This document shows positions 5,104-57,549 of a stretch of 64,000 bases of DNA, in pieces. Each line of letters opens with the position of its first letter. Position 1 is the first letter of the stretch. Where the stretch lies: the NCBI GenBank assembly GCA_002269645.1, contig NIVC01003090.1, positions 56,148-120,147 on the forward strand, in the 5' to 3' direction. The stretch comes from Macrostomum lignano. Taxonomy: Eukaryota. The notes beneath the pieces were generated by a model. It did not search any database. It saw only the letters and a list, made by a program, of their open reading frames with translations, and had not been told where the DNA came from. Made by a program: the position numbers and the translations under genes.

Positions 5104-6495
5104 ATGTCGGTCGCCTCCTCAGCCGAGAGCGCTTCCGCCGGGAAGTCTGCAGCAGCCGCCGCCGGCGCCACCGCCGCTGCCACCACCTCCTTGTTTTTCT
5201 CGCCGCCTGCCGACTTGGCCGAGGACTACAGCGGCGACAGCAGCTGCGACGAAGAATTCTCCGCGGCAGCGGCGGCGGCTGCGGCTGCAGCTGCGGCTGC
5301 TTCAACTTCCGCATCAGCAGATGCAGACTCCGACGAGGACGCTGAGCTTGAGCTGGCATCGCAGCAGCCGCAGGAGCAGCAGCCGCAGCAGCAGCAGCAG
5401 AAGCGGCGCGGGCATCACGTGAAGCCGCCTTACAGCTACATCGCCCTCATCACCATGTCGATCCTGCAGTCGCCGGAGCGCAAGCTCACGCTCAGCGGAA
5501 TCTGCGAATTCATCATCAATCGATTCCCGTACTACAAAGAGCGGTAGGCTATTTCTTAGAAACACTACAGTTTCCATTGTGTTTCTGGTGTTTACTCTAC
5601 ACTGTATATAAATGTATAAAACCTTCACTCCGAACGCAGGTTCCCTGCCTGGCAGAACAGCATCAGGCACAATCTGTCTCTGAACGACTGCTTCGTGAAG
5701 ATCCCCAGGGAGCCGGGCAACCCGGGCAAGGGCAACTACTGGACGCTGGACCCACAGTCCGAGGACATGTTCGACAATGGCAGCTTCCTGCGCCGGCGGA
5801 AGCGCTACAAGCGGCAGACGCAGCCCGACCTTTACTTCCCCATTGCCGCCTCTGCCGCCTCGTTTATGGCAGCCAATTCGCATGTCGGCATGTCGCATCC
5901 GCCGCCGCCGCCTCCGCTGCCGCCTCCGCCGCCTCCGCCGCCTCTGGGCCTGTTTCCCGCGGCAGCGGCAGCAGCGGCAGCAGCGGCGGCCGCCGCTTTT
6001 CACAGTCGCAGCCAAAGTTCGCCTCATCATTCCCAGCAGCAGCAGCCGCCTCCGCCGCAAATGTCGAATCCGCCGACTCGACATCCCCCGACAAGCCTCC
6101 TGCCGGGCCTCGGGCCCCTTCTAGCCGGCCTGCCAAATCATCCGCTCAACCTCAGCCTGAGCCATCACAGCCAGCATCCCCAGAGCCAGCCTCATCAACA
6201 GCAGCAGCCGGCATCTCCACAGCAGCAGCAGCGGCGGAGGCGCCGGAGCGGCTCTCCCGGGTTCACCATCGACAGCCTCATCAGCGGCGGCGGCAGCAGC
6301 AGCGCCTGCAAGCGCCAAACATCGTCGTCAAGTTCCTCGCCGCCGCGCCAGGCGCCTCCGCCGGCACTTTCGGCGCCTTTCCTACCGCCGCCGCCGCCGC
6401 CGCCTCCGTATCAGCACCCGCCGTTCGATCTGGAAGCCTACCATCGCCTGCTGCGCAGCGGCGCCTTCCTGCCGCCACCGACTTGGATTCGCTGA
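5104..6495 (+). CDS. FoxD: Forkhead box D transcription factor, 2 exons (5104-5543, 5640-6495), 431 aa
   Basis: The spliced forkhead domain [99 protein letters not shown] matches FoxD-class signatures. There is a 96-bp phase-2 GT..AG intron (5544-5639), an eh1-like motif FTIDSLI at 6262-6282, and acidic N-terminal and Pro/Ala/Gln-rich tracts. Confidence 0.95.
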
Positions 6496-36107: not shown

Positions 36108-37464
36108 ATCTATACCTAAACTTTGAACTTATGAATTTCTATCGCATTTGCTTTTGTTCTACACTGATTTGTTTTTTTCATTGCTTCGTAATGTGGCTGC
36201 GACTGGGAGGGAGGGATCTCGAAGTCACCTTAATTTGCACCAGACCCCATTACTGATCTCGGTTCTTCCTATCCTTCCGAATGTTGCTATTTCCCCCTCA
36301 CATCGTTTCTCTCCTTTCTCCATGGTCGCGCTAATACTTTCCCTATCTTAGCTATTTCACATGTGCATTCTGTGTGCACCCCTCTCCTTGCACTCTGTGC
36401 CTTAGATCTACCTCTTTTCAGTTGCAAACGTACTAGTATATTTGGTTATTTCTTAGCTGCAAATGCCCTATAAATAGTTAGTTATTTCTCCTTTTTATGG
36501 TTTTCTTCAGAATTTCTCTACGTCAAGCCCCTTCATGTTATCTTCTTTACAACTTTGTTTGTTTCTGTTTCGATTCTTTTCTTAACCCTCCTTTGCTTTT
36601 ATTACTTTAATGCTTTAATGCTTTTGCTTACTGAACGTATTGAATGCATACATTAAATATTTAAATAAACTATCGCGCACACTTTTTCTTATTATGTGGC
36701 CAAGCTTAAACATTTCTATCTAGATCTAGATTTCTTATTGAATCCCTCCAGAATTGCCTTATTTTTCTTCTCGATACATGTAGCTCTCTTGGAGGGGGTC
36801 ATTTAGCTCGTACATGCAAAATCTTCCTATTCAACTAGATACAAGTTTTATTACAGTATGAAAAGTGGCAGTCACCGTAATTAAGTTTATGCCCTCTAAA
36901 AACTTACTATAATATCGTGCACTATCACTAAGACCAAAAGCAGGAAATATGACCAGCTCTTCGGGCCGGATTTGCAAGCAAAATATCGGTTAACTGGCCC
37001 GGATTTTTCGGCGCAAAATAATTCTGGGTGAATCGCCCGTAAATATTCGGGTATAAATGCGGGTGCATGCACGGGTGCATCGCCCGAAAAACGAACTTTT
37101 CGTAACGATTCCGGGCCAGTAGCCCGGCAATTTTTACACCCGCAAAGTGCTGACGATTTCGGGTGAAGAGTAGGGTGAAAATTCGGGCCAATTTTTCATA
37201 GGGAGACAATAAAAAATTCCTAATGCTTATTTACAAAATTGTGACTGCAGTCAACTTCACGACATTTTCTGCAGATTTGAAGATAAAGTTACAAAACTAC
37301 AACCCTATTTCCTAAAAGTTATGTACGACGTAACGAACAAAAAGCAAAACTGGAAAATACTAAGTAATGTATTCTAATTTTGATGAGGATAGCAAACACA
37401 CTGGAACTTAATGAGCATGATTTCATGTTTGAATATTCAGCAAGATACAGAAAATAAAAGCTAC

Positions 37465-38040
37465 GTGTGACATGTGGGCTGTGTGACAGGTGGACTGTGT
37501 GGCAGGTGGGCTGTGTGACAGGTGGGCTGTGTGACAGACAGGCTGTGTGACAGACAGGCTGTGTGACAGACAGGCTGTGTGACAGGTGGGCTGTGACAGG
37601 TGGGCTGTGTGACAGGTGGGCTGTGTGACAGACAGGCTGTGTGACAGACAGGCTGTGTGACAGGTGGGCTGTGTGACAGGTGGGCTGTGTGACAGACAGG
37701 CTGTGTGACAAACAGGCTGTGTGACAGACAGGCTGTGTGACAGGTGGGCTGTGTGACAGGTGGGCTGTGTGACAGGTGGGCTGTGTGACAGACAGGCTGT
37801 GTGACAGACAGGCTGTGTGACAGACAGGCTGTGTGACAGGTGGGCTGTGTGGCAGGTGGGCTGTGTGACAGACAGGCTGTGTGACAGACAGGCTGTGTGA
37901 CAGACAGGCTGTGTGACAGGTGGGCTGTGTGACAGGTGGGCTGTGTGACAGGTGGGCTGTGTGACAGACAGGCTGTGTGACAGACAGGCTGTGTGACAGA
38001 CAGGCTGTGTGACAGGTGGGCTGTGTGACAGGTGAGCTGT
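37465..38040. repeat. 16-bp array (GGCTGTGTGACAGGTG / GGCTGTGTGACAGACA)n just downstream of the M13-like stop codon
   Basis: Direct reading. Two unit variants are interspersed in short runs. Confidence 0.95.
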
Positions 38041-38094
38041 GTCCAACAGAAGCAGTGAATAGCGTATTTGCAGGTATCCCTATCGCCAACGCAT

Positions 38095-41000
38095 TCACTG
38101 CCAATCAGGCAGATGGAATTGCTGCAGACAGCTGCCAGGGTCTGCTGTGCCGCCCCCAGCAACAGATTGTTTCAACTCAGCCTTGCAGTTGAAGAGCTCT
38201 CGAAACCAGCGGTTATTTTGCACTGCCGTGTTCACGCTACAAAAGAAAACAAATTGTTGATGGTGTAGCCCAGCTTGATCACGTAATTTTGCATGCACTT
38301 TATCAGAAAGTTCAGATGCTCACCGCTCTCGCCTGGACAGGTAGGTCTGCTTGTTGAGCCGGAGAAATTTTTTGTCTTCAGAGCCGCAATTCGACTGTAA
38401 ACAAAAACAAATTTTGAACGAAAATATACTGTAAACTCCCTGTTTAAGCACAATCAATGTACACAGGGTCTCAAGCTCTCTCTCTGTCAAAGCACAATCA
38501 ATGTACACAGGGTCTCAAGCTCTCTCTCTGTCAAAGCACAATCAATGTACACAGGGTCTCCAGCTCTCTCTCTGTCAATCACAATCAATGTACACAGGGT
38601 CTCCAGCTCTCTCTCTGTCAAATCACAATCAATGTACACAGGGTCTCCAGCTCTCTCTCTGTCAATCACAATCAATGTACACAGGGTCTCCAGCTCTCTC
38701 TGTCAAATCACAATCAATGTACACAGGGTCTCCAGCTCTCTCTCTGTCAAAGCACAATCAATGTACACAGGGTCTCCAGCTCTCTCTGTCAATCACAATC
38801 AATGTACACAGGGTCTCCAGCTCTCTCTGTCAATTCACAATCAATGTACACAGGGTCTCCAGCTCTCTCTCTGTCAAATCACAATCAATGTACACAGGGT
38901 CTCCAGCTCTCTCTGTCAATCACAATCAATGTACACGGGGTCTCCAGCTCTCTCTGTCAATCACAATCAATGTACACAGGGTCTCCAGCTCTCTCTGTCA
39001 ATCACAATCAATGTACACAGGGTCTCCAGCTCTCTCTCTGTCAAATCACAATCAATGTACACAGGGTCTCCAGCTCTCTCTGTCAAATCACAATCAATGT
39101 ACACAGGGTCTCCAGCTCTCTCTGTCAATCACAATCAATGGACACGGGGTCTCCAGCTCTCTCTGTCAATCACAATCAATGTACACAGGGTCTCCAGCTC
39201 TCTCTGTCAATCACAATCAATGTACACGGGGTCTCCAGCTCTCTCTGTTAATCACAATCAATGTACACAGGGTCTCCAGCTCTCTCTGTCAAATCACAAT
39301 CAATGTACACAGGGTCTCCAGCTCTCTCTCTGTCAAATCACAATCAATGTACACAGGGTCTCCAGCTCTCTCTGTCAATCACAATCAATGTACACGGGGT
39401 CTCCAGCTCTCTCTGTCAATCACAATCAATGTACACGGGGTCTCCAGCTCTCTCTGTCAATCACAATCAATGTACACAGGGTCTCCAGCTCTCTCTGTCA
39501 AATCACAATCAATGTACACAGGGTCTCCAGCTCTCTCTCTGTCAAAGCACAATCAATGTACACGGTCTCCAGCTCTCTCTGTCAAATCACAATCAATGTA
39601 CACAGGGTCTCCAGCGCTCTCTGTCAAGTCACAATCAATGTACACAGGGTCTCCAGCTCTCTCTGTCAATTCACAATCAATGTACACAGGGTCTCCAGCT
39701 CTCTCTGTCAAATCACAATCAATGTACACAGGGTCTCCAGCTCTCTCTCTGTCAAAGCACAATCAATGTACACAGATTCTCCAGCTCTCTCTGTCAATCA
39801 CAATCAATGTACACAGGGTCTCCAGCTCGCTCTCTGTCAAATCACAATCAATGTACACAGGGTCTCCAGCTCTCTCTCTGTCAAAGCACAATCAATGTAC
39901 ACAGGGTCTCCAGCTCTCTCTCTGTCAAATCACAATCAATGTACACAGGGTCTCCAGCTCTCTCTCTGTCAAATCACAATCAATGTACACAGGGTCTCCA
40001 GCTCTCTCTGTCAAATCACAACCAATGTACACAGGGTCTCCAGCTCTCTCTCTGTCAAATCACAATCAATGTACACAGATTCTCCAGCTCTCTCTCTCTG
40101 TCAAATCACAATCAATGTACACAGGGTCTCCAGCTCGCTCTCTGTCAAATCACAATCAATGTACACAGGGTCTCCAGCTCTCTCTCTGTCAAAGCACAAT
40201 CAATGTACACAGGATCTCCAGCTCTCTCTCTGTCAAATCACAATCAATGTACACAGGGTCTCCAGCTCTCTCTCTGTCAAATCACAATCAATGTACACAG
40301 GGTCTCCAGCTCTCTCTGTCAAAGCACAATCAATGTACACAGGGTCTAATAGAATAAAAATGTCAATTAGCTACTGTAAACTTAAAAAATCATATAGAAC
40401 GATACTGAAAGAGAACAAGTGACCAACTTGAGCATAAGAGATAAACAACAGCTGTGCGATATCATAGCTGACAGTGGGCAAAGCGAGTTGCTCAGGCCCG
40501 GTGCGCAAGTAAGTTCTTAACGCTTGAGCAGTGACCAGCAGTCCCAGGCTGCTAGAGAATGCCTGGTTGGCCAGCTCGAGTGAGGCGTCCTGTTGGCCAG
40601 ACTGAAATTGTGTTTTTTTGTTTTAATTACTTGAACAAATTCTGCACAACTTCGGAATCATGCGCAGGAGCCACTTATGACAGTTTATAAATCATGGAAA
40701 TACCCCATGTAGCAGAGATTCATAGGGATACCCTCTATAGCAGATATTAATAGGGATAACCTTTATAGCAGAGATTCATAGGAATACCCTCCATAGCAGA
40801 GATTCATAGGAATACCCCTTATAGTAGAGATTCCTAGGAATACCCTCTATAGCAGATTTTCATAGGAATACCCTCCATAGCAGAGATTTATAGGAGTACC
40901 CTATATAACAGATATTAATAGGGATAACCTTTATAGCAGAGATTCATAGGAATACCCTCCATAGCAGAGATTCATAGGAATACCCTCTATAGCAGATTTT

Positions 41001-42830
41001 CATAGGAATACCCTCTATAGCAGAGATTCATAGGAATACCCTTTAAAGCAGAGATTCATAGGAGTACCCTATATAATAGATATTAATAGGGATAACCTTT
41101 ATAGCAGAGATTCATAGGAGTACCTTTATAATAGATATTAATAGGGATAACCTTTATAGCAGAGATTCATAGGAGTACCCTCTGTAGCAGAGATTCATAG
41201 GAATACCCCCTATAGCAAAGATTCATAGGAATACCCTCTATAGCAGAGATTCATAGGAAAACCCTCTGTAGCAGAGATTAATAGGAATACCTTTGTAGAC
41301 ACTTATCTTCATTTGCAATTAGGAATTACAGCGAGTGAAGAAGCAACTAATTTTAGTGCTAAGAAACGACACAGTCCCAGTGAAAAGCAGGAAAACTTGC
41401 AACAAAGACAGGTGCGCACCAGTCGGGCCTGTATCCGGTTGCGAAAGCACTGCCTGGCAGACTGAGTGGCGGCTGATACGCGACTACCGCGAATGATCTG
41501 ACCTTGGCTGGAGACGGCGGATCCTTCAATTTGAAAGTGAGACGTTTCCTAAGCATTTACTATTAGTAGTATCTGAGGGGCATTTTATGGGAATCCTGAA
41601 ACATTCCGATGGGTCTTTAGACATTAGCAGACAACAGTATTGTTAGATTAGGAGCAGATTAGGAGAAAAGAATGGCAGATTAGGAGAAAAGAATGGCAGA
41701 TTAGTCAAGAGAATGGCAGATTAGTCAAGAGAATGGCAGATTAGTCAAGAGAATGGCAGATTAGGAGAAAAGAATGCCAGATTAGGTCAAGAGAATGGCA
41801 GATTAGTCAAGAGAATGGCAGATTAGGTCAAGAGAATGACAGATTAGGAGAAAAGAATGCCAGATTAGGTCAAGAGAATGGCAGATTAGGTCAAGAGAAT
41901 GGCAGATTAGGAGGAAAGAATGCCAGATTAGGACAAAAGAATGGCAGATTAGGAGAAGAAAATGGCGGATTAGGAGAAGAAAATGGCGGATTAGGAGAAG
42001 AGAATGACAGATTAGGAAAAGAGAATGACAGATTATGGCAGATTAGGAGAAAAGAATGGCAGATTAGTCAAGAGAATGGCAGATTAGTCAAGAGAATGGC
42101 AGATTAGTCAAGAGAATGACAGATTAGGAGAAAAGAATGGCAGATTAGGTCAAGAGAATGGCAGATTAGGAGAAAAGAATGCCAGATTAGGTCAAGAGAA
42201 TGGCAGATTAGTCAAGAGAATGGCAGATTAGGTCAAGAGAATGACAGATTAGGAGAAAAGAATGCCAGATTAGGTCAAGAGAATGGCAGATTAGGTCAAG
42301 ATAATGGCAGATTAGGAGGAAAGAATGCCAGATTAGGACAAAAGAATGGCAGATTAGGAGAAGAAAATGGCGGATTAGGAGAAGAAAATGGCGGATTAGG
42401 AGAAGAGAATGACAGATTAGGACAAAAGAATGGCAGATTAGGAGAAGAGAATGACAGATTAGGAGAAGAGAATGACAGATTAGGACAAAAGAATGGCAGA
42501 TTAGGAGAAGAGAATGACAGATTAGGAGAAGAGAATGACAGATTAGGAAAAGAGAATGACAGATTAGGACAAAAGAATGACAGATTAGGAGAAGAAAATG
42601 ACAGATTAGGAGAAGAGAATGACAGATTAGGACAAAAGAATGGCAGATTAGGAGAAGAAAATGGCGGATTAGGAGAAGAGAATGACAGATTAGGAAAAGA
42701 GAATGACAGATTATGGCAGATTAGGAGAAGAAAATGGCAGATAGAATAGAAACATCAGAGAAAGCTCTGTGATCGAGCAGCGAACTCTCTGTCGGAGCTC
42801 ATGGGAGTTGTGAAGCTCGGGACACTGACT

Positions 42831-42906
<76 letters not shown>

Positions 42907-45900
42907 TGCTGTTTTCAATTTCTCTATCAGAAATTCCGGCCAGGCCAGCCATGCGGAGAGCAGAGCCGGCGCTCACCGAAAGAGTCCAAAGCTGCTGCCA
43001 TCCGAGTTGCCAAGGCGGTGCCCAGCATGCCGAACTTGAGATAGCTGGCGCGGGCGGAGGGGTTGGGCAGGCAACGGTCAGGAAACACGGAGTCAGAAAG
43101 ACATGCAGCTCAAAAAGTGAAATTTTCTCAAAGAGTCGCACCGCATGTAAGACCATTTTGTATGCAAATTGGAGTACTGGAGAGTTTATAATACTTTTCT
43201 GACTTTTGGCTGGTCGAATTCTGTTATTTTTGTTCAAACTATAATGAACAGCAGGCAGATATTTCCTACTGACACTGTTGCAATTAACTAACCAAGTGTG
43301 AATAGTTGATTACTCAATTTAAAATTGCTTCATCAGAGGAAGCGGCTACTCACAAAGGCATGCTGTTGTCCCACATGTGGAATGGCCATTGAAATAGTGC
43401 GGCTGGCAGGACTGGAAATCGAATCAAGCGAATCGAATGCAGCTATTTAAACGCAAATTTTTATTGTCTCAAGTAATATAATTACTGGCAATAATTAATG
43501 ATGACTGCGATTCACATCCACGAACTCCTGTTGAAAACTCGTTTTAAAATAGTTGTCCATAAACTATTTAGTACAAAATTTAAATCCGTGCCAAAATGGA
43601 AGCTGTTAAACAAAATTTTAAACTAAATAAATCCGCTTTTGGTTAGGTTAAAAATAGTCAGATTTTTAATAATAAGTTTGCTTTTTAAGGCGTTTTAAAG
43701 GTGCTGATAAAAGTGCGTCAAATTCATACGCTACACAATTTTACACATAAAGTAGAGTACTTACAGACGGTATTGTAGGCAGCTATGTACACCGGTTTCA
43801 CAGCCGTGGAGTCTAGGATTTCGCTAAAAATGGTTTTCAGTCACTTATTTAAGTTTTTTATAATCTGACAATGTGAACACTTTTGAGAAAAGTCAAGAGT
43901 GCTTTTAGTTCTTGTCCCCATCGTTTAAGATAAAAGCAGAATATGCGCGTAGAACAATTCATCTTGTTGCATTGCATGGCTTCTGGAACAGTCTGCTTCA
44001 ATGAACGTGCCTCTTGTTTCAGGGCCTGCTCTTGTATCGATTGCACTTCAAAATTAAGAAAGTCTATATAGGGATGCGGAGGCGTTTTGACAGACAGGAA
44101 GATATAAATAAGTATGACACGTAATATCGTCCACTTGAGCCAGAGAACATAAGGCTTTTGTCTCTACAGGTTTAGTCACATTAATTCGATGTTTCAAACG
44201 CACGGTGTATTAAGCAACAATGACTCACCCCAACTGAAAGTGCTTTCCGTAAAGCTGTTTTCTCAGCCTGGCCTGTTTGAATTTTTCCAAGCCCAGTGCA
44301 GCCTCGATTGCAGTTTCGTTGTTGCCGATTTCCCACTGTAAAATTGACGGGTTTGACAATCAGGCAATGGAAGTACTTCGTATGAGTCATACTGCATTAG
44401 AGTGCAAAAAGATTTTACCTATTTGAGATTTGATGAAAAATTTACAAAACCAAATTTTTAGAAAAATTATATGAATGCTTTACTTACCTCCGTGTAGTAA
44501 TCGGCCAAGTAATATTCTGTCGGTTCCTGTCCACCGTGACCAATAAGCACCTTTATTGATTTGATCTAACCAATAGAATAGAATGTAAATAGGTTTTTCC
44601 ATTTAAAGTTCAAACAAGAGACTATATTGCGTATAAAGAGCTAAAAAAGGGTTGGGGAGTTGGACTGAGCCAGAGGGACAGGAATTGAAAGATAAGGAGT
44701 GAGGTGGCTGGTACAATGGGGTCGAGAGGGGTTTAGACTGAGCTACAGGGACAGGAATTGAAAGATAAGAAGTGAGGTGGCTGGTACAATGGGGTCGAGA
44801 GGGGTTTAGACTGAGCCAGAGGGACAGGAATTGAAAGATAAGGAGTGAGGTGGCTGGTACAATGGGGTCGAGAGGGGTTTAGACTGAGCTACAGGGACAG
44901 GAATTGAAAGATAAGGAGTGAGGTGGCTGGTACAATGGGGTCGAGAGGGGTTTAGACTGAGCCAGAGGGACAGGAATTGAAAGATAAGGAGTGAGGTGGC
45001 TGGTACAATGGGGTCGAGAGGGGTTTAGACTGAGCCAGAGGGACAGGAATTGAAAGATAAGGAGTGAGGTGGCTGGTACAATGGGGTCGAGAGGGGTTTA
45101 GACTGAGCCAGAGGGACAGGAATTGAAAGATAAGGAGTGAGGTGGCTGGTACAGTGGGGTCGAGAGGGTCAGGGAGTTAGACTGAGCTAGAGGGACAGGA
45201 ATGGAAAAATAACGACAGAGGTGGCCGAGATTATCTGAGATATTTATGAAGGAGGGGTCTAGATGATTTATGAAGAGAGTCACTTGACAGCTCTCAGACA
45301 CAACTCTCGTGATAGACCAAGGTCACCTTCTCTGACGCTTCGGCCCTGACCGCTGGGTCAACTTCGCTGGCCGAGTCCAGCAGGTCTATAAAAGCAGATT
45401 TTAGCAGCGGCACAACCACCTGCTGCATCTGGAATAGGTTATTACATTTATGTAAAAGTAACAAGAATATTTCTGCCATGCATTTTTTCCATGCCTAATT
45501 CGCTCTAGCTCCTCCAGCCCCTGCCCCTCATCCGCCCTCTCCTCCCGCCCCTAATCACCCTCTCCTCACCCTCATCCGCCCTCTCCTCCCGCCACTCGTT
45601 CGCCTCTCCTCCCGTCCCTCATCCGAAGCACTCACGGGCAGCAAACTGAGTCCTTGGCGCCGCAGGTCGGCCAAAAACAGGGCGCTGAGGCCCGGCGAAG
45701 GCAGCAGAGGTCGGATACAAGCCGCCGTCAGCTGCTGCCTCTCGTCCAGCTGTTTCCAACCGGAAGCGGTCAGTCCAGACCGGAAGTTCAGCGTTAGTCG
45801 GCGGGACTTTGCTGACAGATACGGCGCGTATTTGTACACAGCGCTGAACTCCAGAAACTTTTTCAGGTCACTGTTTGAGACGGAAGGCGATCGGGGATGC

Positions 45901-48900
45901 GTTGAATGATTTAGAAATATGAGATCTCACCTGACTCATTTGGTAGATGCTGGATGGTATGAGATCTCACCGATTCATTTGGTATGAGATCTCACCTGAC
46001 TCAGTTGGTATGAGATCTCACCTGACTCATGTGGTATGAGATCTCATTCGACTCATGTGGTATGAGATCTCACCCGACTCATTTGACATGAGATCTCACC
46101 TGACTCATGTGGTATGAGATCTCACCTGACTCATTTAGTATGAGATCTCAACTGACTCATTTGGTATGAGATCTCACCCGACTCATTTGGTATGAGATCT
46201 CACCCGACTCATTTTGAGTTTGATTAATTATATAGATCTGTTCATAAAAGCCTGCAAAAAGACTTAAGCTAGTAGATAAAATGCATGACCTATAGAGCAA
46301 AAAAGGCAATAAGCAACAGAACAGTTGATCAGGTCACGTGATACAAGTCACGTGGTCTTAAAAATCGCGAATGCCAGCTCACTCATCTCGTAGGCCTCGC
46401 AGCAGTCTGCTAAGCCGTTGGAAATATCCCAGATCCCCGATTACGACTGGAAGGTCGTCTACGTCCGCGGAGTCTGGCACGTCGGAGCCCAGGAGCAGGC
46501 GGGGCAGCAACTCGTCGAACTGCAGCTTAACGCGTTAAGGATATAGGTGAATTTGAGCTGCTGCTCAAGCACTGCTCTGATTCTTCACTTGAACATATCA
46601 TGCGCACATGTCTGGATTATGAGGCAAGCATGTGTCTATAGATCTAGTACAAGCATGTGTCTATAGATCTGGTACAAGCCTGTGTCTATAGATCTGGTAC
46701 AAGCATGTGTCTATAGATCTAGTACAAGCATGTGTCTATAGATCTAGTACAAGCATGTGTCTATAGATCTAGTACAAGCATGTGTCTATAGATATAGTAC
46801 AAGCATGTGTCTATAGATATAGTACAAGCATGTGTCTATAGATCTAGTACAAGCATGTGTCTATAGATCTAGTACAAGCATGTGTCTATAGATATAGTAC
46901 AAGCATGTGTCTATAGATCTAGTACAAGCATGTGTCTATAGATCTAGTACAAGCATGTGTCTTTAGATATGGAAAATGAATGTGTACTTAGATCTAGTAC
47001 AAGCATGTGTCTATAGATATGGAAAATGAATGTGTCCTTAGATCTGGTACAAGCCTATGTCTATAGATCTGGAAAATGAATGTGTCCTTAGATCTAGTAT
47101 AAGCCTGTGTCTATAGATCTGGAAAATGAATTTGTCCTTAGATCTAGTATAAGCCTGTGTCTATAGATATGGAAAATGAATGTGTCCTTAGATCTGGTAC
47201 AAGCCTATGTCTATAGATCTGGAAAATGAATGTGTCCTTAGATCTAGTATAAGCCTGTGTCTATAGATCTGGAAAATGAATTTGTCCTTAGATCTAGTAT
47301 AAGCCTGTGTCTATAGATCTGGAAAATGAATGTGTCCTTAGATATTGTACAAGCATGCGTCTATAGATCTGGTACAAGCATGTGTCTATAGATCTGGTAC
47401 AAGCATGTGTCTATAGATCTGGTACAAGAATGTGTCTATAGATCCAGTACAACCCATCAGTCTACATGTACATGTAGATATGTTACCCAGTCCATGCCCC
47501 TCCAGTGCAACTCCCTGTCTGTCTCACACCGGCTCGCAATGCATTCTCCATCTCACCGCTAGTCCTTCCAGCTGGCGGCTCCGTCTGAGCTCGCCCAGCG
47601 TCATCTGAATAGCGCGCAGCCTCGGCCGCTGTTTGTACGGCCGGCCAGTCTCGGACAGAGCAATACCGGCCAGAGCGGTTAGCACAGTCAGCGAACTCCT
47701 GGCGTAGCTTTCGCCAACTCCGTTGCCAAGGAAACCGATATCATTGACCAGGGTGGCGGCCAGCTGGGTGTACCTTGCTCGGACGGCCGGGTCTCTGAGC
47801 TGAGCGCCACTGCGCATGTCCGGGTGTCTGTACTCGTCCAGCTGAGCTCGCGGATAGAGAGGCGGGTGGGTGCGTAAGCTATTCATAGTGACAACTGCCT
47901 GATCAGAGTGACAAATGCCTGATCAGAGTGACAACTGCCTGATCAGAGTGACAACTGCCCGATCAGAGTGACAACTGCCCGATCAGAGTGACAACTGCCT
48001 GATCAGAGTGACAACTGCCCGATCAGAGTGACAACTGCCTGATCAGAGTGACAACTGCCTGATCAGAGTGACAACTGCTTGATCAGAGTGCAACTGCCTG
48101 ATCAGAGTGACAACTGCCTGATCAGAGTGACAACTGCCTGATCAGAGTGACAACTGCCTGATCAGAGTGACAACTGCTCAGACAGAAGCAGAAAGCAGTC
48201 AGCAGCCTGTGAACTTACAAACAACACCCGCCGTCCAGGTGACACAGGTGAGCTGTCAACGAACACGCTGAAGAAGGTGTCCACGCCCAGTTCCGAGTGC
48301 AAGCAGGCAATTCGGTGGGCTGAAATTATTTTAGGAATCAAATACTAACAACTCGTATCGCATGGCATTCCCTGCTACCTGAGGAGGGACCCAATAAAAT
48401 AAGATTAGCCCTAGTAGTGGCTCATCGAAGTCTGCTACTCGCTTGCTCAGCCAGGTAAGCCCCAGATCAATGTGGCGACCCACCGGCTTGATAGAGTGAT
48501 TGATTGGGGATATTTTGGCCTGTTGACACGGGGCTAGGGGCACAATCGGGGATCGAAGGATGACATTGACTGATAGGAAGATGTAGGGAAAAGTCAGAAG
48601 CGCTGAGGTTAACAACCGACCACAGGCATTGAGTATGGCAGTACTTAGCCAACCGATCAGGAACCGGTTAGAGGTCAACTCGGCATTTTTAACCAATATC
48701 TGTCAGCTTGTTGATTCTATATTGACTTTACATTCTGTATTAAACTTAGTCAGTTCATGGACAACGGGGATTGTAGTCCATGACGGGTGTACGCTCAAGA
48801 TTGGCGCTAATGGGGTGTCCAGATTGGCGCTAATGGGGTGTCCAGATTGGCGCTAATGGGGTGTCCAGATTGGCGCTAATGGGGTGTCCAGATTGGCGCT

Positions 48901-50175
48901 AATGGGGTGTCCAGATTGGCGCTAATGGGGTGTCCAGATTGGCGCTAATGGGGTGTCCAGATTGGCGCTAATGGGGTGTCCAGATTGGCGCTAATGGGGT
49001 GTCCAGATTGGGGCTAATGGGGTGTCCAGATTGGCGCTAATGGGGTGTCCAGATTGGGGCTAATGGGGTGTCCAGATTGGCGCTAATGGGGTGTCCAGAT
49101 TGGGGCTAATGGGGTGTCCAGATTGGCGCTAATGGGGTGTCCAGATTGGGGCTAATGGGCTGTCCAGATTGGCGCTAATGGGGTGTCCAGATTGGCGCTC
49201 ACTGAGTCCCCGGCCCAGGATGCAGGACCGCAGCCGGTCCCGCAGGTTCTCCCAGCCGGCGTCGCCGTTTTGCTGGCAGTGGTCGGCTGGCAGAGAGCCG
49301 CAGGCCCGATAGAAGGCACCGAGCTTCGCCCGCCAGAAGCCGCCACCAGCGGGGCCCCGGCCTGAGGCCGCCAAAGCCAGCAGGCCGCGCAGGCGTCTCT
49401 CGGTGACGCGGCGAAGTCGCTCAATCGGCGACCACCGGTCGGCTTCGTCATCGAAATCGTCAACATCGTTGAGGAACTCCTGCGGCGACGACGATGACGT
49501 CAGGCCAGTCGGCTGACGTCCGGAGCAGGCGAAGCCGTGGAAGTCGCGGCAGGCCGGCAGGGTCTGGTTCAGCGTCTCCTTCATGTCGGCCGCCGCTCGC
49601 AGGCAGGCCAGGGTAAGGCAGTACCGCGGCTGCCGCTGCTGTCCCGCTGGCAGCACCAGCGCTGACTGGCCGGCAACTCCGCCAGCCTGGCGCCGGCTGG
49701 CCGCGGCCAGGACCAGCAGGAGGCCACCGCACAGAGCTGCCAGACAGAGCAGCAGGGCGCAGACGCAGCTGCACAGGAGGCGCTCACGTCGACGCCTGCG
49801 TCTCTGATTGCCACCAACGCCGCCGGGGTGATCCTCTTCAGCCACCTCGGCACCTCCGCCGCCACCCAACGATGAAGAAGGCTTCAGCAGGCGCTGCAGT
49901 GCGAGGTGGACCGGCCGCTTCGGCTGCTGTCGCCGGGTGCGCTTGAGTGGCGCCTCCGACGATGCGGCAGCAGCGACAGACGTGTCCGACTCGGCCTCCG
50001 CCTTCAGCATCCGTTGGCTGACGATATCGGGAGAGGCCGACAGCTTGAGCCGATGCGGCAGCGGCTGTTGAGTTGCCTGCGAGTAGGCGGGCCCTGAGAA
50101 GCTCGGATAGCTGCTGCCGCTGCTGCCGCTGCTGCTGGCGCATCCGTTCCAGCCTCCACGGCGAGCAGAGGACAT
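38095..50175 (-). CDS. Neprilysin/ECE-like (peptidase M13) type II membrane protein, predicted catalytically inactive; 15 exons, about 899 aa
   Basis: Exons: 50175-49203, 48319-48219, 47841-47557, 46525-46383, 45870-45636, 45428-45327, 44565-44488, 44335-44229, 43823-43765, 43411-43354, 43044-42977, 41523-41420, 40601-40428, 38394-38324 and 38236-38095. All introns are GT-AG with matching phases, and the total is 2700 nt with no internal stop. Features include a basic stretch plus signal anchor (RRRRRERLLCSCVCALLLCLAALCGGLLLVL) and the M13 landmarks CLTLACL...PACRDFHGFACS, SAFIDLL...AEASEK/IKSIKVLIG, FLPAALFQWPF, QLLFISYAQ/SNC and RVNTAVQNNRWFRELFNC. Confidence 0.85.
38445..40350. repeat. ~41-45-bp array (TCAA[A]TCACAATCAATGTACACAGGGTCTCCAG(CT)nG)n in M13-like intron 13
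   Basis: Direct reading. Unit length varies with the internal (CT)n count. Confidence 0.95.
40705..41300. repeat. ~28-bp array (AGCAGAGATTCATAGGAATACCCTCTAT)n in M13-like intron 12
   Basis: Direct reading. Copies are moderately diverged. Confidence 0.9.
41645..42740. repeat. 21-22-bp array (GAATGGCAGATTAGGAGAAAA / ...TTAGTCAAGA)n in M13-like intron 11, followed by (CT)n at 42833-42903
   Basis: Direct reading. Confidence 0.92.
44663..45200. repeat. 73-bp tandem array, about 7 copies, in M13-like intron 6
   Basis: GACTGAGC at 44663 and 44736 gives a period of 73. Confidence 0.95.
45920..46210. repeat. 26-bp array (ATGAGATCTCACCTGACTCATTTGGT)n in M13-like intron 4
   Basis: Direct reading. 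Confidence 0.9.
46625..47450. repeat. 25-bp array (GATCTAGTACAAGCATGTGTCTATA)n with a central two-unit higher-order block, in M13-like intron 3
   Basis: Direct reading. A GGAAAATGAATGTGTCCTTA variant alternates in 46970-47340. Confidence 0.92.
47887..48180. repeat. 20-bp array (GATCAGAGTGACAACTGCCT)n in M13-like intron 2
   Basis: Direct reading. Confidence 0.95.
48797..49202. repeat. 23-bp array (GGGGTGTCCAGATTGGCGCTAAT)n starting at the donor of M13-like intron 1
   Basis: Period of 23 (TCCAG at 48841 and 48864). Confidence 0.95.
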
Positions 50176-50504
50176 GGGGCGTCAGGCTCACAGAGTTTTT
50201 CTCTCGAAGGAATTGTTTTTCAATGCGGCTCGATTTTCACTCGGTTTTTTCAGCTAGAGAAGAATGAAGGTCGCTCGAGTCGGTTCTCCATCAATTTCGT
50301 TCAGTCAACAAGTTGTAATCGCCCAGCTTCCTGTCTAAACTGCGTGTGGATTTGCTCCTCCATTGGCTTTGAGACGGATATCCAATCAGAGTTGCTAGAA
50401 ATGCCTTTGGTGTAGAATGCCATCCGAATGGGCTGTCAATATGAGATGAGCTGTGAGACCCGCGGGTCTAATGCGTTTTTGCCTCTTCAATAAAGCATAT
50501 TCTG

Positions 50505-50830
50505 TATGCCGATTCTTCAGGTGGTTTGGATGCGATTCTGCAGGTGGTTTGGATGCGATTCTTCAGGTGGTTTGGATGCGATTCTGCAGGTGGTTTGGAT
50601 GCGATTCTTCAGGTGGTTCAGATGCGATTCATCAAGTGTTTTAGATGTGATTCTACAAGTGGTTCAGATGTGATTCTTCAAGTGGTTTAGATGCGATTCT
50701 TCAGGTGGTTCAGATGCGATTCTTCAAGTGGTTTAGATGCGATTCTTCAGGTGGTTCAGATGCGATTCATCAGGTGGTTTAGATGCGATTCTTCAAGTGG
50801 TTTAGATGAGAATCTTCAGGTGGTTTGAAT
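50505..50830. repeat. 23-bp array (CAGGTGGTTTGGATGCGATTCTT)n upstream of the M13-like gene
   Basis: Direct reading. Confidence 0.9.
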
Positions 50831-51175
50831 CTTTAGGAAGTTTATATAAGCGATTCTTCTTGATTTCTCCGGTTTAATAGTGTCGAACTTCTAACATTCG
50901 ATTATTAGAAGAGTACTGTATTTGAGTGTACTCGAATTTCTCCACTACCGTATTATACAAAGTATAGTTTTACATATTTCATCTACGCGACTAAATGTGC
51001 ATCCTCGGCAAAATTCTTGCAGCAGACTCGTACGCGAAATAGACAAACCTTTGGGAATAAGCGAGTTGCACTATCCACCCGTCCTGCGTCTACTCGTACA
51101 TTAGCAGCGGTAAAGTTACTTTAACTTTAAAGTACGCTCGTACATCCACAGAAAATTAGATCTAGATAAGATCTA

Positions 51176-51417
51176 GCTTGGCTTGGCGCTTCGCTTGGCG
51201 CTTCGCTTGGCGCTTCGCTTGGCGCTTCGCTTGGCGCTTCGCTTGGCGCTTCGCTTGGCGCTTCGCTTGGCGCTTCGCTTGGCGCTTCGCTTGGCGCTTC
51301 GCTTGGCGCTTCGCTTGGCGCTTCGCTTGGCGCTTCGCTTGGCGCTTCGCTTGGCGCTTCGCTTGGCGCTTCGCTTGGCGCTTCGCTTGGCGCTTCGCTT
51401 GGCGCTTCGCTTGGCGC
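51176..51417. repeat. Near-perfect 12-bp array (GCTTGGCGCTTC)n, about 20 copies
   Basis: Direct reading. It produces the SEAP/AKRS/LALR artefact ORFs. Confidence 0.97.
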
Positions 51418-54667: not shown

Positions 54668-56281
54668 GACTGCTGTTGGCTGTTGAAGTTACTGCACAAC
54701 TGCGGGAGAGGTAAACAGGTACTCCTAGAATGCATAGACAAGGTTAATTTAACTAGCAACTTTTAATCGATAACCAATAAGCAAAACTTATTGAGAGATT
54801 ACGGGAGTCGAAGTTATAATGGAACCCAAGTATCAATGTATTATGCCAAATTTGGTGCCGGCAGTCAAACGGATTTGCCAAAGAATCAAGATATAGACTA
54901 GACGACTAAGAATGAATTCACAAGCTGTATGCAAGAAGCGTCTCTGGTTAACGAATGGCGAGAGTTAATAAACAAAATCGCCAAATTTCAAATCCAAATG
55001 AAGTTAAATGACGACTTGCTGAATCATCCACACCATAACACGAAGACCTTCCAAGCACCTTAAACCACAAATCAACATGCTAAAATCCGCACCAGTCCAG
55101 CGCTTGTGAAAAATATCTGCCAAAGTACAAGAGTTCACAGGATTTTTTTAAAAACCTGATTCAGCTATTTCTTCATTCGGGTTTTCATCGTTGAAATGAC
55201 TTGCAATATTAAGTCGGTGGCACATTAGTCAATATCTATCTTTTCGGAGTCGATGGCGTTAACTTAGATCAGCTGTGACAGAATTTTAAAGAAAATTTAT
55301 AACATTCGATTTCGGTCGGCAAGATTGCAACAAAGTGTCGTCCTTGTAGTGGTTGATTCAGTAGTTCGAACTACAGTAGCAACAGTAACGGGTTATTCTG
55401 AAAGAGGTTCGATGACCACTGCTACCGTACCTCTGTTGATAGGATTTATTATTTACAAACACGAATGGGGGAATATTCGTAGGGTAACTTATTGACTATC
55501 TATGAATTTAGAAAGAAAGCAAAATAAATAAAAACGAAGACAATAACAACTCGGCAAAATTCAATGTTATAATGTTTAACAAGATGGTAACCAAATAAGA
55601 ACTAGATTAAACCTGCCAAGCAATATAGATAGAAAAACGCAGTCACAAACTCATTGATAATGAATACGACGTACTCTTACATGCCAAGTGCACCTTCCTT
55701 TGCAGATTTTCGCGAAGTGAATCATTCCCGACAATTATTATTCGACTTAAATACACGTCGGATACAAGCTTGAATAAACAATATCGAAATACATTCCTAC
55801 GAGGATACTATTTAACTAGCCGAATTTTTTGATGATTATTATTTCACAACACAAAGAGTATGAAGTATCATCGCATTATATTTGCAATGCATACGAGTAA
55901 GCACAAGACGTCTCTTCAACACAAAGCTTAGGTACTTTCCAAGATTAGCCAAGATCAAGGGTTACCAGTAAGTCTAAGTAGCAGCAATCCATTCCACTAG
56001 CAGCAATAGGATGCACAGTGGAACTACTGTACTAGTGAGTACTTTAAATGTAGCCTGAGCCACCAACTGCCTCGAACTTCCAAAATATTCCGTAGACTAC
56101 CTCTATCAACTGAGACGGACCCAGGAACGCCAAAGCTACAAGATTGGTGCACAAAGCCGTAACTAAACCAGTGCAAGAGGTCAGATTATTTGTCAAACTG
56201 AGAAATTTATACACTCGTACTATGCGAACAACAACCATACTGCTTGTGGCCGATTCATAAGTTTTGCTACTCTGATTCGTA

Positions 56282-57549
56282 CGAGGAGGAACGATCAAAA
56301 AGTCCTGTCACCGCTTAATTTTTCTGCACATCAGACTTCTCTTAAATTGATTTTAGTCGTTACTATAGACGCATGTCTCCTACTTAAACATAATTTTAAA
56401 AGCCACTCTTGCCTAGCTCGAGAATCTGTTGCATTTTTCTTCACCGACCCTGAGCGACTGTCAGTTTCAAGCGAAGCCATACGTGCCGTCATCCATTATG
56501 AGTGGAGGCGTGGCACAGCAGCAAAGGAAATTGAAGCCCGTTTGCGTGAGCAACATGGGGAGTCTGCATCGTCATATCGCACTATCATCCACTGGATGCA
56601 CAGTTTCGAAGGAAGCAAGTGACTTCGAAGACGAACTTAGCAGGGGCAGACCCAGCACTTCCAGCAGCCAGAGTGTCATCGACAACGTTCAGAGCCTCCT
56701 TGACAAAGACAAAAATAGACGGGTGACTATTTCTGAAAAAGCAGATGCCTGTGACATCAGTTATGGCAGCGTGCAGTCCATCCTGACGGTCCAGCTGGGA
56801 ATGTCCAGGGCTTGTGCCAAAAATTTTAACTTTGGAGATACAGCACAATCAGATGCAGGCTTTTTAGCACCTGTTGCACCTGATCTAGTACCGCCAAGAG
56901 GAGTTTCTCGACAATCATGATAGGGGATGAGTCGATGTTCTTCCTGTACGAGCCGGAAACCAAAGTCCAAAGCAAGCAGTAGAAGCGCCCCGATGAGCCC
57001 CCACCGCTGAAGGCCACGACGGTGTCATCGATGAAGCGGATTGGCACCATCGTCTGGGATCGGCAAGGAGTGCTGCTGATCAAGTGGCTGTCTGAGAAGC
57101 GGACGGTCACAGGAGATGCTACGTTGCCGCTTGACACATTGCGCCAGCTGAAGGAGGCAATCAAGGAAAATAAGGCGTTGCAAGGTCACCAGGGGCATCC
57201 GGCTGCCCCATGAAAACGCCTCAGCGCACAACTGTCACAAGATGCAGGCTGCAATCCGCGAGCTGGTGTTCGAGCAGCTCCCTCTCCCTGATCATTCGTC
57301 AGACCTGGCCATCGGACTTGTGAGGACGCTACTGAGCTCCTGTGACTGCACTGGCATCCTTGGTGAACCAGTGGTGAAAACACCAGGGTGAAGACTGGTA
57401 CTCTGCGGGCATTTAGAAGCTACCAGAGCGCTGGGCCAAGTGTGTCACTGCGTGGTAACTTTGTTGAGAAAGTACAGGAAAATTACCAGTTTTATTGTTC
57501 TCTTTTGTTTCTAGTTTGGAAAGTGACAGAACTTTCTGATTGTCTCTCG
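56282..57549 (+). mobile_element. Decayed mariner (Tc1/mariner) element, 1268 bp
   Basis: TA at both ends (56280-81, 57550-51) and imperfect TIRs CGAG...ATCA(A/G)AAAGT(C/T)CTGTCAC. Transposase fragments are RAVIHYEWRRG...EARLREQHGE, FEDELSRGRPS, ISYGSVQSILTVQLGM, IMIGDESMF, IVWDRQGV, HENASAH (HDNA-like) and HSSDLA (YSPDLA-like). Stops and frameshifts are present. Confidence 0.9.

What the first reader, a model, noticed from the sequence alone, without database searches (positions are those of the whole stretch)
38095..50175. Intact 15-exon neprilysin-like gene with the whole catalytic apparatus erased (putative pseudo-peptidase)
Seen: 15 phase-consistent exons give an uninterrupted ~899-codon type II membrane protein with M13 landmarks and conserved Cys. 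Established: M13 enzymes need HEXXH (two Zn ligands plus the catalytic Glu), the Glu of ENxADxGG (third ligand), the NAxY substrate motif and a C-terminal His. Seen: exon 11 reads LKFGMLGTALA-TRMAA-ALDSFG where LNYGGIGxVIG-HEITH-GFDDxG is expected (43007-42993). Exon 13 has LANQAFSSSLGL in place of TLGENIADNGGL, exon 9 has AVKPVY in place of VNAYY, and exon 14 has TYLSRRER in place of xHSPxxxR. Inference: coordinated loss at every active-site position with the frame and splice sites preserved suggests a repurposed non-catalytic protein (peptide sink, receptor or scaffold), possibly part of an undescribed lineage-specific family.
Basis: partly seen in the sequence, partly recalled or inferred. 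Interest (0 to 1): 0.78.

Follow-up and report, generated by a model that had tools for sequence, protein, structure and literature searches.

The report
Flatworm neprilysin-like gene lacking active site
An intact but unannotated 15-exon gene in the flatworm Macrostomum lignano encodes a membrane-anchored relative of the peptide-cutting enzyme neprilysin that has lost every residue needed to cut; such "dead" neprilysin relatives are already well known in flies and worms, so this is a new member of a known kind.

Summary
On the minus strand, 15 exons (50175-38095) with GT..AG at all 14 introns give an uninterrupted 897-codon ORF. It encodes a type II membrane protein that passes Pfam's curated cut-offs for Peptidase_M13_N (75-87 bits) and Peptidase_M13 (37 bits). 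It matches human neprilysin at E=6e-15.

In that alignment TRMAA (43007-42993) lies under HEITH, NQAFS under ENIAD and VKPVY under VNAFY. Tyr replaces His711, and the C-terminal CxxW is gone. Arg717 and the family-wide cysteines remain. No frame of the locus holds an alternative exon with HExxH.

The window is the last 64 kb of M. lignano contig NIVC01003090.1 (Mlig_3_7). The gene is not in that record's annotation, and no close relative turned up in the protein searches that could be run.

The active-site codons differ from canonical ones by about 12 nucleotide changes, yet the ORF is intact. That points to a maintained non-catalytic protein rather than an old pseudogene. Expression is not shown.

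Inactive M13 homologues are an established class: 21 Drosophila Nepl genes, including the type II membrane protein Gone early. I rate it a new member of a known kind, of modest interest. The proposed function, binding without cleavage at the cell surface, is inferred by analogy only.

The parts
49203..50175 (-). Exon 1 (aa 1-325). Start ATG at 50175-50173. It encodes a 132-aa Ser/Gly/Arg-rich cytoplasmic tail ending in RRRRRRER (49803-49780), the transmembrane helix (aa 133-159, 49779-49699), and the start of the ectodomain with C-x4-C...PC...AC (49623-49519).
   Evidence: The alignment to neprilysin Cys56/61/79/87 is. GC is 0.69.
48219..48319 (-). Exon 2 (aa 325-358). It contains VFVDSSPVSPGRRVLF, the counterpart of the M13_N 'FVGTDDKNS..IHIDQ' block.
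   Evidence: Adding it raised the Peptidase_M13_N score from 55.4 to 75.3 bits and made the match one continuous stretch.
47557..47841 (-). Exon 3 (aa 359-453).
   Evidence: The 47841 acceptor scored better than 47898 (78 against 69 bits).
46383..46519 (-). Exon 4 (aa 454-499).
45636..45870 (-). Exon 5 (aa 499-577). It includes Cys550, the proposed counterpart of neprilysin Cys410.
   Evidence: The Cys410 assignment rests on motif context, not on a printed alignment.
45327..45428 (-). Exon 6 (aa 578-611).
44488..44565 (-). Exon 7 (aa 612-637). IKSIKVLIGHGG aligns with neprilysin ALAIKERIGYPD.
   Evidence: (87.3 bits with this acceptor).
44229..44335 (-). Exon 8 (aa 638-673).
43765..43823 (-). 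Exon 9 (aa 673-693). AVKPVY (43804-43787) stands in place of the substrate-binding VNAFY, so Asn542 becomes Lys.
43354..43411 (-). Exon 10 (aa 693-712). LPAALFQWPFH aligns with neprilysin FPAGILQPPFF.
42977..43044 (-). Exon 11 (aa 712-735). LKFGMLGTALA-TRMAA-ALDSFG, with TRMAA at 43007-42993 in place of HEITH. Both His zinc ligands and the catalytic Glu are lost.
   Evidence: The same column holds HEIGH in another M. lignano M13 protein.
41420..41523 (-). Exon 12 (aa 735-769). It includes Cys760, the counterpart of neprilysin Cys620.
40428..40601 (-). Exon 13 (aa 770-827). ANQAFSSSLGL (40571-40539) stands in place of GENIADNGGL, so Glu646 becomes Gln and Asp650 becomes Ser.
38324..38394 (-). 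Exon 14 (aa 828-851). SNC is the counterpart of neprilysin VWC (Cys694). In TYLSRRER, His711 becomes Tyr and Arg717 is kept.
38095..38236 (-). Exon 15 (aa 851-897 plus the stop at 38097-38095). VNTAVQNNRWFRELFNC holds the counterpart of Cys734. The C-terminus is ...SCLQQFHLPDWQ instead of CxxW.

Best explanation
This is a real, structurally intact gene of Macrostomum lignano. It encodes a type II membrane protein of the neprilysin (M13) family that cannot be a zinc peptidase.

Shown: the fold-defining features are kept. These are both Pfam domains, the cysteines of the family-wide disulfides and Arg717. All three zinc ligands (His583, His587, Glu646) are replaced, and so are the catalytic Glu584, the supporting Asp650 and His711, and the substrate-binding Asn542.

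Inferred: the active-site codons have drifted by many nucleotide changes while a 2.7-kb frame and 28 splice sites stayed intact. The protein has therefore been kept by selection for a job that does not need catalysis.

Inferred by analogy only: it sits at the cell surface with the M13 ectodomain outside. There it binds a peptide or protein partner without cutting it, either sequestering or presenting it, or modulating a receptor. The unusually long 132-residue cytoplasmic tail is available for trafficking or signalling. This is the mode proposed for Drosophila Gone early and for the secreted Nepl proteins.
For: The gene model has 15 exons, all introns are GT..AG, and the frame is open. Pfam M13_N scores 75-87 bits and M13 37 bits, both above the curated cut-offs. 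Neprilysin in PDB matches at E=5.8e-15, with the residue-by-residue replacements listed above. Cysteines align with neprilysin Cys56/61/79/87/620/694/734.

No HExxH occurs in any of the six frames of 37000-51000, and no NAxY, HSPxxxR or terminal CxxW occurs in any minus-strand frame of the locus.

In a substitutions-only neutral simulation the ORF stays open in under 1% of trials at 5% divergence and in 0.04% at 10%. The seven active-site codons need about 12 nucleotide changes from canonical codons (codons).

The nearest annotated M. lignano M13 protein found (P0124, HEIGH present) is only 24% identical over the catalytic domain, so this is not a recent dead copy of it.

Precedents: Goe is a type II membrane protein with a 129-residue intracellular domain that lacks HExxH and ExxA/GD and acts at the germ-cell surface (PMC4242634). 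Sequestration of peptides has been proposed for Nepl proteins (PMC8223033).
Against: There is no evidence of transcription. No gene is called over exon 1 in the duplicate contig or over exons 14-15 in this contig, although the tool does list genes that run over a locus end. The exact product is not in the 15-billion-protein collection.

No orthologue or close paralogue was found, so there is no dN/dS and no test of conservation.

The only second copy available is near-identical: 6 substitutions in 11,410 noncoding bases and 1 synonymous change in exon 1. It says nothing about constraint.

No structure could be predicted, because the tool refuses spliced proteins. A binding function is pure analogy.

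The C-terminal CxxW motif, reported as important for folding and maturation of neprilysins (PMC8223033), is absent.
Confidence: 0.6

Rival explanations
1. It is a silent or dying gene copy (an unprocessed pseudogene) whose frame happens still to be open. It makes no functional protein.
For: It is absent from the transcript-based GenBank annotation in both assembly copies. It has no relatives in the protein collections. Large tandem arrays fill its introns and lie directly after the stop codon. The nearest AATAAA is 1.2 kb downstream of the stop. All catalytic motifs are gone, and so is CxxW.
Against: An unconstrained 897-codon frame is lost quickly: the simulation gives P<0.01 at 5% divergence from substitutions alone, with indels ignored. 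Yet the active-site codons carry about 12 nucleotide changes, and the protein is only 24% identical to the nearest paralogue found. All 28 splice dinucleotides are intact. Structural cysteines and Arg717 are kept while the catalytic residues are not, which is the pattern of selection on fold and not of uniform decay. The GenBank annotation deliberately dropped transcripts that overlap repeat annotations, so absence from it is weak evidence (PMC5730564).
Confidence: 0.22
2. It is still an active peptidase. It would use either an alternative exon that supplies the zinc site, or a non-canonical set of ligands.
For: None directly.
Against: No HExxH occurs in any of six frames across 37000-51000. 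The only ExxGD hits are translations of a 44-nt intronic tandem repeat. No NAxY, HSPxxxR or CxxW-stop occurs in any minus-strand frame. The exon chain aligns with neprilysin residues 402-696 with only two small gaps totalling six residues (289 against 295), so there is no room for a missing exon. Only three His remain in residues 640-897 (669, 704, 892), and none is in the zinc-helix or ENIAD columns.
Confidence: 0.03
3. The exon chain is an artefact of stitching open frames together in a repeat-rich, GC-rich region, and no such gene exists.
For: Single exons give no significant Pfam hit on their own. Exon 1 is 69% GC, where long open frames arise easily. Two acceptors were picked by Pfam score.
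Against: The first, unoptimised chain already passed both curated Pfam cut-offs (55.4 and 37.5 bits). The final chain covers the M13_N profile from position 2 to 379 in one stretch, in the correct order and orientation, followed by the M13 domain. The transmembrane helix, C-x4-C...PC...AC and the C-terminal Cys pattern fall where the family has them.
Confidence: 0.02

Closest known systems
Drosophila Gone early (Goe, CG9634, Nepl2), a non-peptidase M13 homologue
   Same: Both are type II membrane proteins with a long intracellular domain (129 residues in Goe, 132 before the transmembrane helix here) and a large M13 ectodomain. Both lack HExxH and ExxA/GD (PMC4242634).
   Different: Orthology was not tested, because no Goe sequence was on hand. 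Goe has shown expression, membrane localisation and a germline phenotype, and this gene has none of these. This protein also lacks NAxY, His711 and CxxW.
Drosophila Neprilysin-like (Nepl) genes: 21 predicted inactive M13 proteins, e.g. Nepl15
   Same: The class is defined by significant similarity to neprilysins while lacking one or more of HExxH, ENIAD, NAY/FY and CxxW (PMC8223033). This protein lacks all four. Sequestering peptides without cleavage has been proposed as their role.
   Different: [quoted passage not shown] The Nepl genes arose by Drosophila-specific expansions (PMC2259306), so they are analogues and not orthologues. No tandem paralogue lies in this window.
Human neprilysin (MME; PDB 1DMT, 4CTH) and ECE-1 (3DWB)
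   Same: They share the domain architecture, topology and disulfide cysteines. The ectodomain from about residue 398 aligns with neprilysin 402-696 at E=5.8e-15.
   Different: Similarity is low. All zinc ligands and catalytic residues are replaced. The cytoplasmic tail is much longer, and the C-terminal CxxW is absent.
M. lignano 'Endothelin-converting enzyme 1' A0A1I8H6W6 (P0124)
   Same: It is from the same species and the same family, and it was the best M13 hit from this species in the exhaustive search.
   Different: It is only 24% identical over the catalytic domain. It carries HEIGH where this gene has TRMAA. It is a fused model of several tandem M13 units.

Membership tests
Peptidase family M13 (homology level; MEROPS would class it as a 'non-peptidase homologue') | Peptidase_M13_N domain above Pfam's gathering score | tested here: met
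   75.3 bits for the 892-aa version and 87.3 bits for the final N-terminal ectodomain, against a cut-off of 32. The match covers profile 2-379 of 381 in one stretch.
Peptidase family M13 (homology level; MEROPS would class it as a 'non-peptidase homologue') | C-terminal Peptidase_M13 domain above Pfam's gathering score | tested here: met
   37.4 bits against a cut-off of 24.5, over profile 3-194 of 205. Neprilysin in PDB matches at E=5.8e-15.
Peptidase family M13 (homology level; MEROPS would class it as a 'non-peptidase homologue') | Type II membrane topology (N-terminal cytoplasmic tail, single transmembrane anchor, ectodomain) | tested here: met
   Kyte-Doolittle maximum of 2.88 around residues 138-156. 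The hydrophobic run is aa 133-159, preceded by RRRRRRER. There is no second hydrophobic segment among the top windows. This is a hydropathy test only, with no dedicated predictor.
Peptidase family M13 (homology level; MEROPS would class it as a 'non-peptidase homologue') | Conserved disulfide cysteines (neprilysin C56-C61, C79-C734, C87-C694, C142-C410, C620-C746) | tested here: met
   Cys186/191/209/217/760/830/868 align with C56/61/79/87/620/694/734. Cys292, Cys550 and Cys887 are assigned to C142, C410 and C746 by motif context only. Those three are inferred and not taken from a printed alignment.
Active M13 peptidase (Nep class of PMC8223033) | HExxH: two His zinc ligands and the catalytic Glu | tested here: not met
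   TRMAA lies under HEITH. No HExxH occurs in any frame of the locus.
Active M13 peptidase (Nep class of PMC8223033) | ENIAD(xGG) / ExxA/GD: third zinc ligand Glu646 and Asp650 | tested here: not met
   NQAFS lies under ENIAD, so Glu646 becomes Gln and Asp650 becomes Ser.
Active M13 peptidase (Nep class of PMC8223033) | NAY/FY substrate-binding motif (Asn542) | tested here: not met
   KPVY lies under NAFY.
Active M13 peptidase (Nep class of PMC8223033) | C-terminal CxxW | tested here: not met
   The C-terminus is SCLQQFHLPDWQ, with eight residues between Cys and Trp and one residue after Trp.
Active M13 peptidase (Nep class of PMC8223033) | His711 (transition-state stabilisation) and Arg717 | tested here: not met
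   His711 becomes Tyr. Arg717 is kept.
Neprilysin-like (Nepl) / non-peptidase M13 homologue class | Significant similarity to neprilysins while lacking one or more of the four catalytic motifs | tested here: met
   All four motifs are absent, with both Pfam domains present. The definition is from PMC8223033.
Neprilysin-like (Nepl) / non-peptidase M13 homologue class | Expressed, and conserved as a non-peptidase across species | not testable with these tools
   No RNA-seq access. The word-based searches and the exhaustive search with the exon-1 ectodomain returned no orthologue. The gene is not in the GenBank annotation.
Orthologue of Drosophila Goe | Reciprocal best match or phylogenetic grouping with Goe | not tested
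The resemblance is one of architecture only (PMC4242634).

The most novel reading that the evidence does not exclude
The gene is the first seen member of a flatworm-specific, membrane-anchored M13 pseudo-peptidase lineage that is expressed and conserved across Macrostomum or wider. It would act as a non-cleaving surface receptor or sink for a neuropeptide or growth-factor ligand. By analogy with Goe this could be in the germline or neoblast niche, with its long cytoplasmic tail signalling inward.
Probability: 0.1. Interest if true: 0.55.

Novelty: new member of a known kind. Interest (0 to 1): 0.3.

Why it matters
If it is expressed, it adds an unannotated gene to a regeneration and stem-cell model organism. 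It would also extend the known range of membrane-anchored dead neprilysin homologues from arthropods and nematodes to a basal flatworm.

Very few of these proteins have a known role. M. lignano offers RNAi, in situ hybridisation and transgenesis, so it could be a workable system for asking what an M13 ectodomain does once catalysis is gone.

It does not open a new category. The loss of catalytic motifs in M13 homologues, their conservation and a ligand-binding role have been discussed since 2008.

Tried and rejected
1. Two word-based homologue searches, with the full model and with the ectodomain, gave no hit. That tool needs shared 5-mers, and it returned only short proteins. The negative result therefore excludes close relatives only.

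2. The exhaustive 1.84-billion-protein search accepts only contiguous window translations. I used the exon-1 ectodomain (150 aa). It returned repeat proteins and a few M13 N-terminal fragments, and no orthologue.

4. I tried for dN/dS from the duplicated copy on NIVC01000350.1. Only exon 1 was reachable, and the copies differ by 0.05% in substitutions, so there is no power.

5. Look-ups of the exon-1 read-through ORF, the gamma-tubulin exon ORF, a LIM ORF and P0001 in the contig index found nothing.

6. I rejected an extra exon between E8 and E9, because the neprilysin alignment is gapless across that junction.

7. I rejected the 47898 acceptor for E3 (69 against 78 bits) and my first 14-exon model, which lacked E2.

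8. Rfam and tRNA scans of the window found nothing. tblastn of the model against the window found no second M13 copy.
Full report
**Where the window comes from.** A 143-aa stretch of the gamma-tubulin exon at 54667-53966 (minus strand) is 100% identical to a UniRef entry from the flatworm Macrostomum lignano. A single-exon ankyrin gene of the window (30249-28813) is on record in GenBank assembly GCA_002269645.1, contig NIVC01003090.1. The 21.4 kb fetched around it is 100% identical to window 40249-18813. The window is therefore the last 64 kb of that 120,147-bp contig, and window coordinate + 56,147 gives the record coordinate. A near-identical second copy of the neighbourhood lies on contig NIVC01000350.1. 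This fits the known redundancy of this assembly, which comes from a line with extra chromosomes (PMC5730564).

**Checking the observation.** Stop-to-stop frames on the minus strand and three-frame views showed M13-like pieces in the right order. A junction search that required GT..AG, a preserved frame and no junction stop gave a chain.

My first 14-exon model already passed both curated Pfam cut-offs: Peptidase_M13_N 55.4 bits against 32, and Peptidase_M13 37.5 bits against 24.5. The M13_N match was split, however, and about 40 profile positions had no counterpart. Intron 1 held a small exon (48319-48219) encoding VFVDSSPVSPGRRVLF, the family's 'FV..D..NS....I.I.Q' block. Adding it raised M13_N to 75.3 bits as one stretch. 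The 44565 acceptor for exon 7 raised it to 87.3 bits, covering profile 2-379 of 381.

The final model has 15 exons and 897 codons, with all 14 introns GT..AG. The exon numbers of the motifs agree, and TRMAA sits at exactly 43007-42993.

**The active site.** phmmer against PDB sequences gives human neprilysin at E=5.8e-15, aligned with two small gaps from neprilysin residue 402 to 696 (earlier model). The alignment shows these correspondences:

| Neprilysin | This protein |
|---|---|
| VNAFY | VKPVY (Asn542 to Lys) |
| HEITH | TRMAA (His583 to Thr, Glu584 to Arg, His587 to Ala) |
| GENIADNGG | NQAFSSSLG (Glu646 to Gln, Asp650 to Ser) |
| VHSPGNFR | TYLSRRER (His711 to Tyr, Arg717 kept) |

The C-terminus is SCLQQFHLPDWQ and not CxxW. 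The family's structural cysteines are in place. Cys186, 191, 209, 217, 760, 830 and 868 align with neprilysin Cys56, 61, 79, 87, 620, 694 and 734. Cys292, 550 and 887 sit in the sequence contexts of Cys142, 410 and 746. Those last three assignments are my inference from motif context.

Residues 133-159 form the only strongly hydrophobic segment and follow RRRRRRER. The protein is therefore type II, with a 132-residue cytoplasmic tail.

**Could another exon restore the site?** No. HExxH occurs in none of the six frames between 37000 and 51000. In the minus-strand frames of the locus there is no NAxY, no HSPxxxR and no CxxW-stop. The only ExxGD matches are translations of a 44-nt tandem repeat in intron 13. 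The near-gapless alignment with neprilysin also leaves no room for a missing exon in the catalytic half. No second M13 copy lies in the window.

**Gene or pseudogene?**

*Evidence for constraint.* The evidence is indirect but points one way. The seven active-site codons (ACT CGG ... GCA, CAG, AGC, TAC, AAA) differ from canonical His/Glu/His/Glu/Asp/His/Asn codons by about 12 nucleotide changes. Catalysis was therefore lost long ago. The nearest annotated M. lignano M13 protein found, A0A1I8H6W6, carries HEIGH in the aligned column and is only 24% identical over the catalytic domain. This gene is not a recent dead copy of it.

A substitutions-only simulation on this coding sequence keeps the frame open in 37% of trials at 1% divergence, 15% at 2%, 0.9% at 5% and 0.04% at 10%. 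Indels and splice-site loss would lower these figures further. An open 897-codon frame with 28 intact splice dinucleotides, and with fold residues kept while catalytic residues are lost, is what selection on a non-catalytic protein produces. Uniform decay would not give that pattern.

*Evidence against expression.* No gene is called over exon 1 in the duplicate contig or over exons 14-15 in this contig. The tool does list genes that overrun a locus. The exact 897-aa product is not in the 15-billion-protein collection. This counter-evidence is weak, because the GenBank annotation was built from transcripts and then filtered to drop transcripts overlapping repeat annotations (PMC5730564). This gene's introns and the sequence just after its stop codon are full of tandem arrays.

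*The duplicate copy.* It could not settle the matter. It differs by 6 substitutions in 11,410 noncoding bases and by one synonymous change in exon 1.

**Relatives.** Two word-based searches found nothing. The exhaustive search, which accepts only a contiguous window translation, was run with the 150-aa exon-1 ectodomain. It returned no orthologue, only repeat proteins, generic M13 N-terminal fragments and the distant M. lignano paralogue.

**What is already known.** Catalytically dead M13 homologues are an established class.
- FlyBase now lists 7 active Nep and 21 inactive Nepl genes in Drosophila. They are defined by the same four motifs examined here, and peptide sequestration is a proposed role (PMC8223033).
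- Gone early is the closest match in architecture. It is a type II membrane protein with a 129-residue intracellular domain that lacks HExxH and ExxA/GD. It sits on the germ-cell membrane and acts without peptidase activity (PMC4242634).

**Most likely mechanism.** The protein is a surface-anchored M13 ectodomain that binds a ligand or partner without cleaving it, with the long tail available for trafficking or signalling. Shown: architecture, fold markers and loss of the catalytic apparatus. Inferred: selection for a function. Analogy only: what that function is. I put 0.6 on the whole statement, about 0.2 on a silent or dying gene, and a few per cent on residual activity or a model artefact.

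**Verdict.** This is a new member of a known kind, of modest interest (0.3).

Noticed in passing
window 1-64000: The window is the terminal 64 kb of M. lignano contig NIVC01003090.1 (GCA_002269645.1). A second copy of at least window 64000-48526 lies on NIVC01000350.1. It differs by about 0.05% in substitutions, plus indels in tandem arrays. It is probably the assembly redundancy described for the DV1 line.
   Followed up: yes
window 37465-38042, 38449-40347, 40692-41291, 41654-42713, 44663-45225, 45955-46214, 46625-47452, 47883-48177, 48798-49199: Most longer introns of the gene hold a large tandem array, for example 44 nt x 44.5 copies in intron 13 and 21 nt x 50 in intron 11. A 16-nt array starts 53 nt after the stop codon. 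The exons are spared. The nearest AATAAA is 1.2 kb past the stop.
   Followed up: partly
window 50175-38095 (exons): GC content is highest in exon 1 (0.69), falls to 0.57 by exon 6 and to 0.44 in exon 7, and stays at 0.49-0.62 in exons 8-15. No explanation was sought.
   Followed up: no
P0124 (UniRef A0A1I8H6W6, M. lignano 'Endothelin-converting enzyme 1', 1248 aa): This public model looks like a fusion of parts of at least three tandem M13 genes, since it has two transmembrane-plus-CxxxxC starts inside it. One unit reads GYEIGHAFD (first zinc His replaced by Tyr) and another reads GHEIGHAFD. M. lignano may therefore hold further partly degenerate M13 genes.
   Followed up: partly
window 54667-53966 and 53429-52767 (minus): This is a two-exon gamma-tubulin gene (454 aa, as in the GenBank call). 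The UniProt entry A0A1I8GEU9 (241 aa) for the same gene departs from it after about residue 224 and looks like a truncated, mis-spliced model.
   Followed up: partly
window 5050-5544 and 5620-6492 (plus): This is a forkhead-box gene whose forkhead domain is split by a short intron: Pfam Forkhead profile 2-41 lies in one frame and 45-87 in the next. It has long poly-Ala, poly-Gln and poly-Pro tracts.
   Followed up: partly
window 56167-57388 (plus): This is a degenerate mariner/Mos1-type transposase remnant. HTH_48 and a partial DDE domain lie in different reading frames.
   Followed up: partly
window 59811-58132 (minus); 30249-28813 (minus); 32789-31121 (minus): The annotated neighbours are a single-exon 559-aa protein with JAZ/matrin-type C2H2 zinc fingers and a long Gln-rich region, a single-exon 478-aa ankyrin-repeat protein, and a 339-aa LIM-domain gene.
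   Followed up: partly
window 50510-50826 and 51176-51417: Two tandem arrays (23 nt x 14 and 12 nt x 20) lie in the 2.6 kb between the gamma-tubulin 3' end and the start codon of the M13-like gene, which is its presumed promoter region.
   Followed up: no
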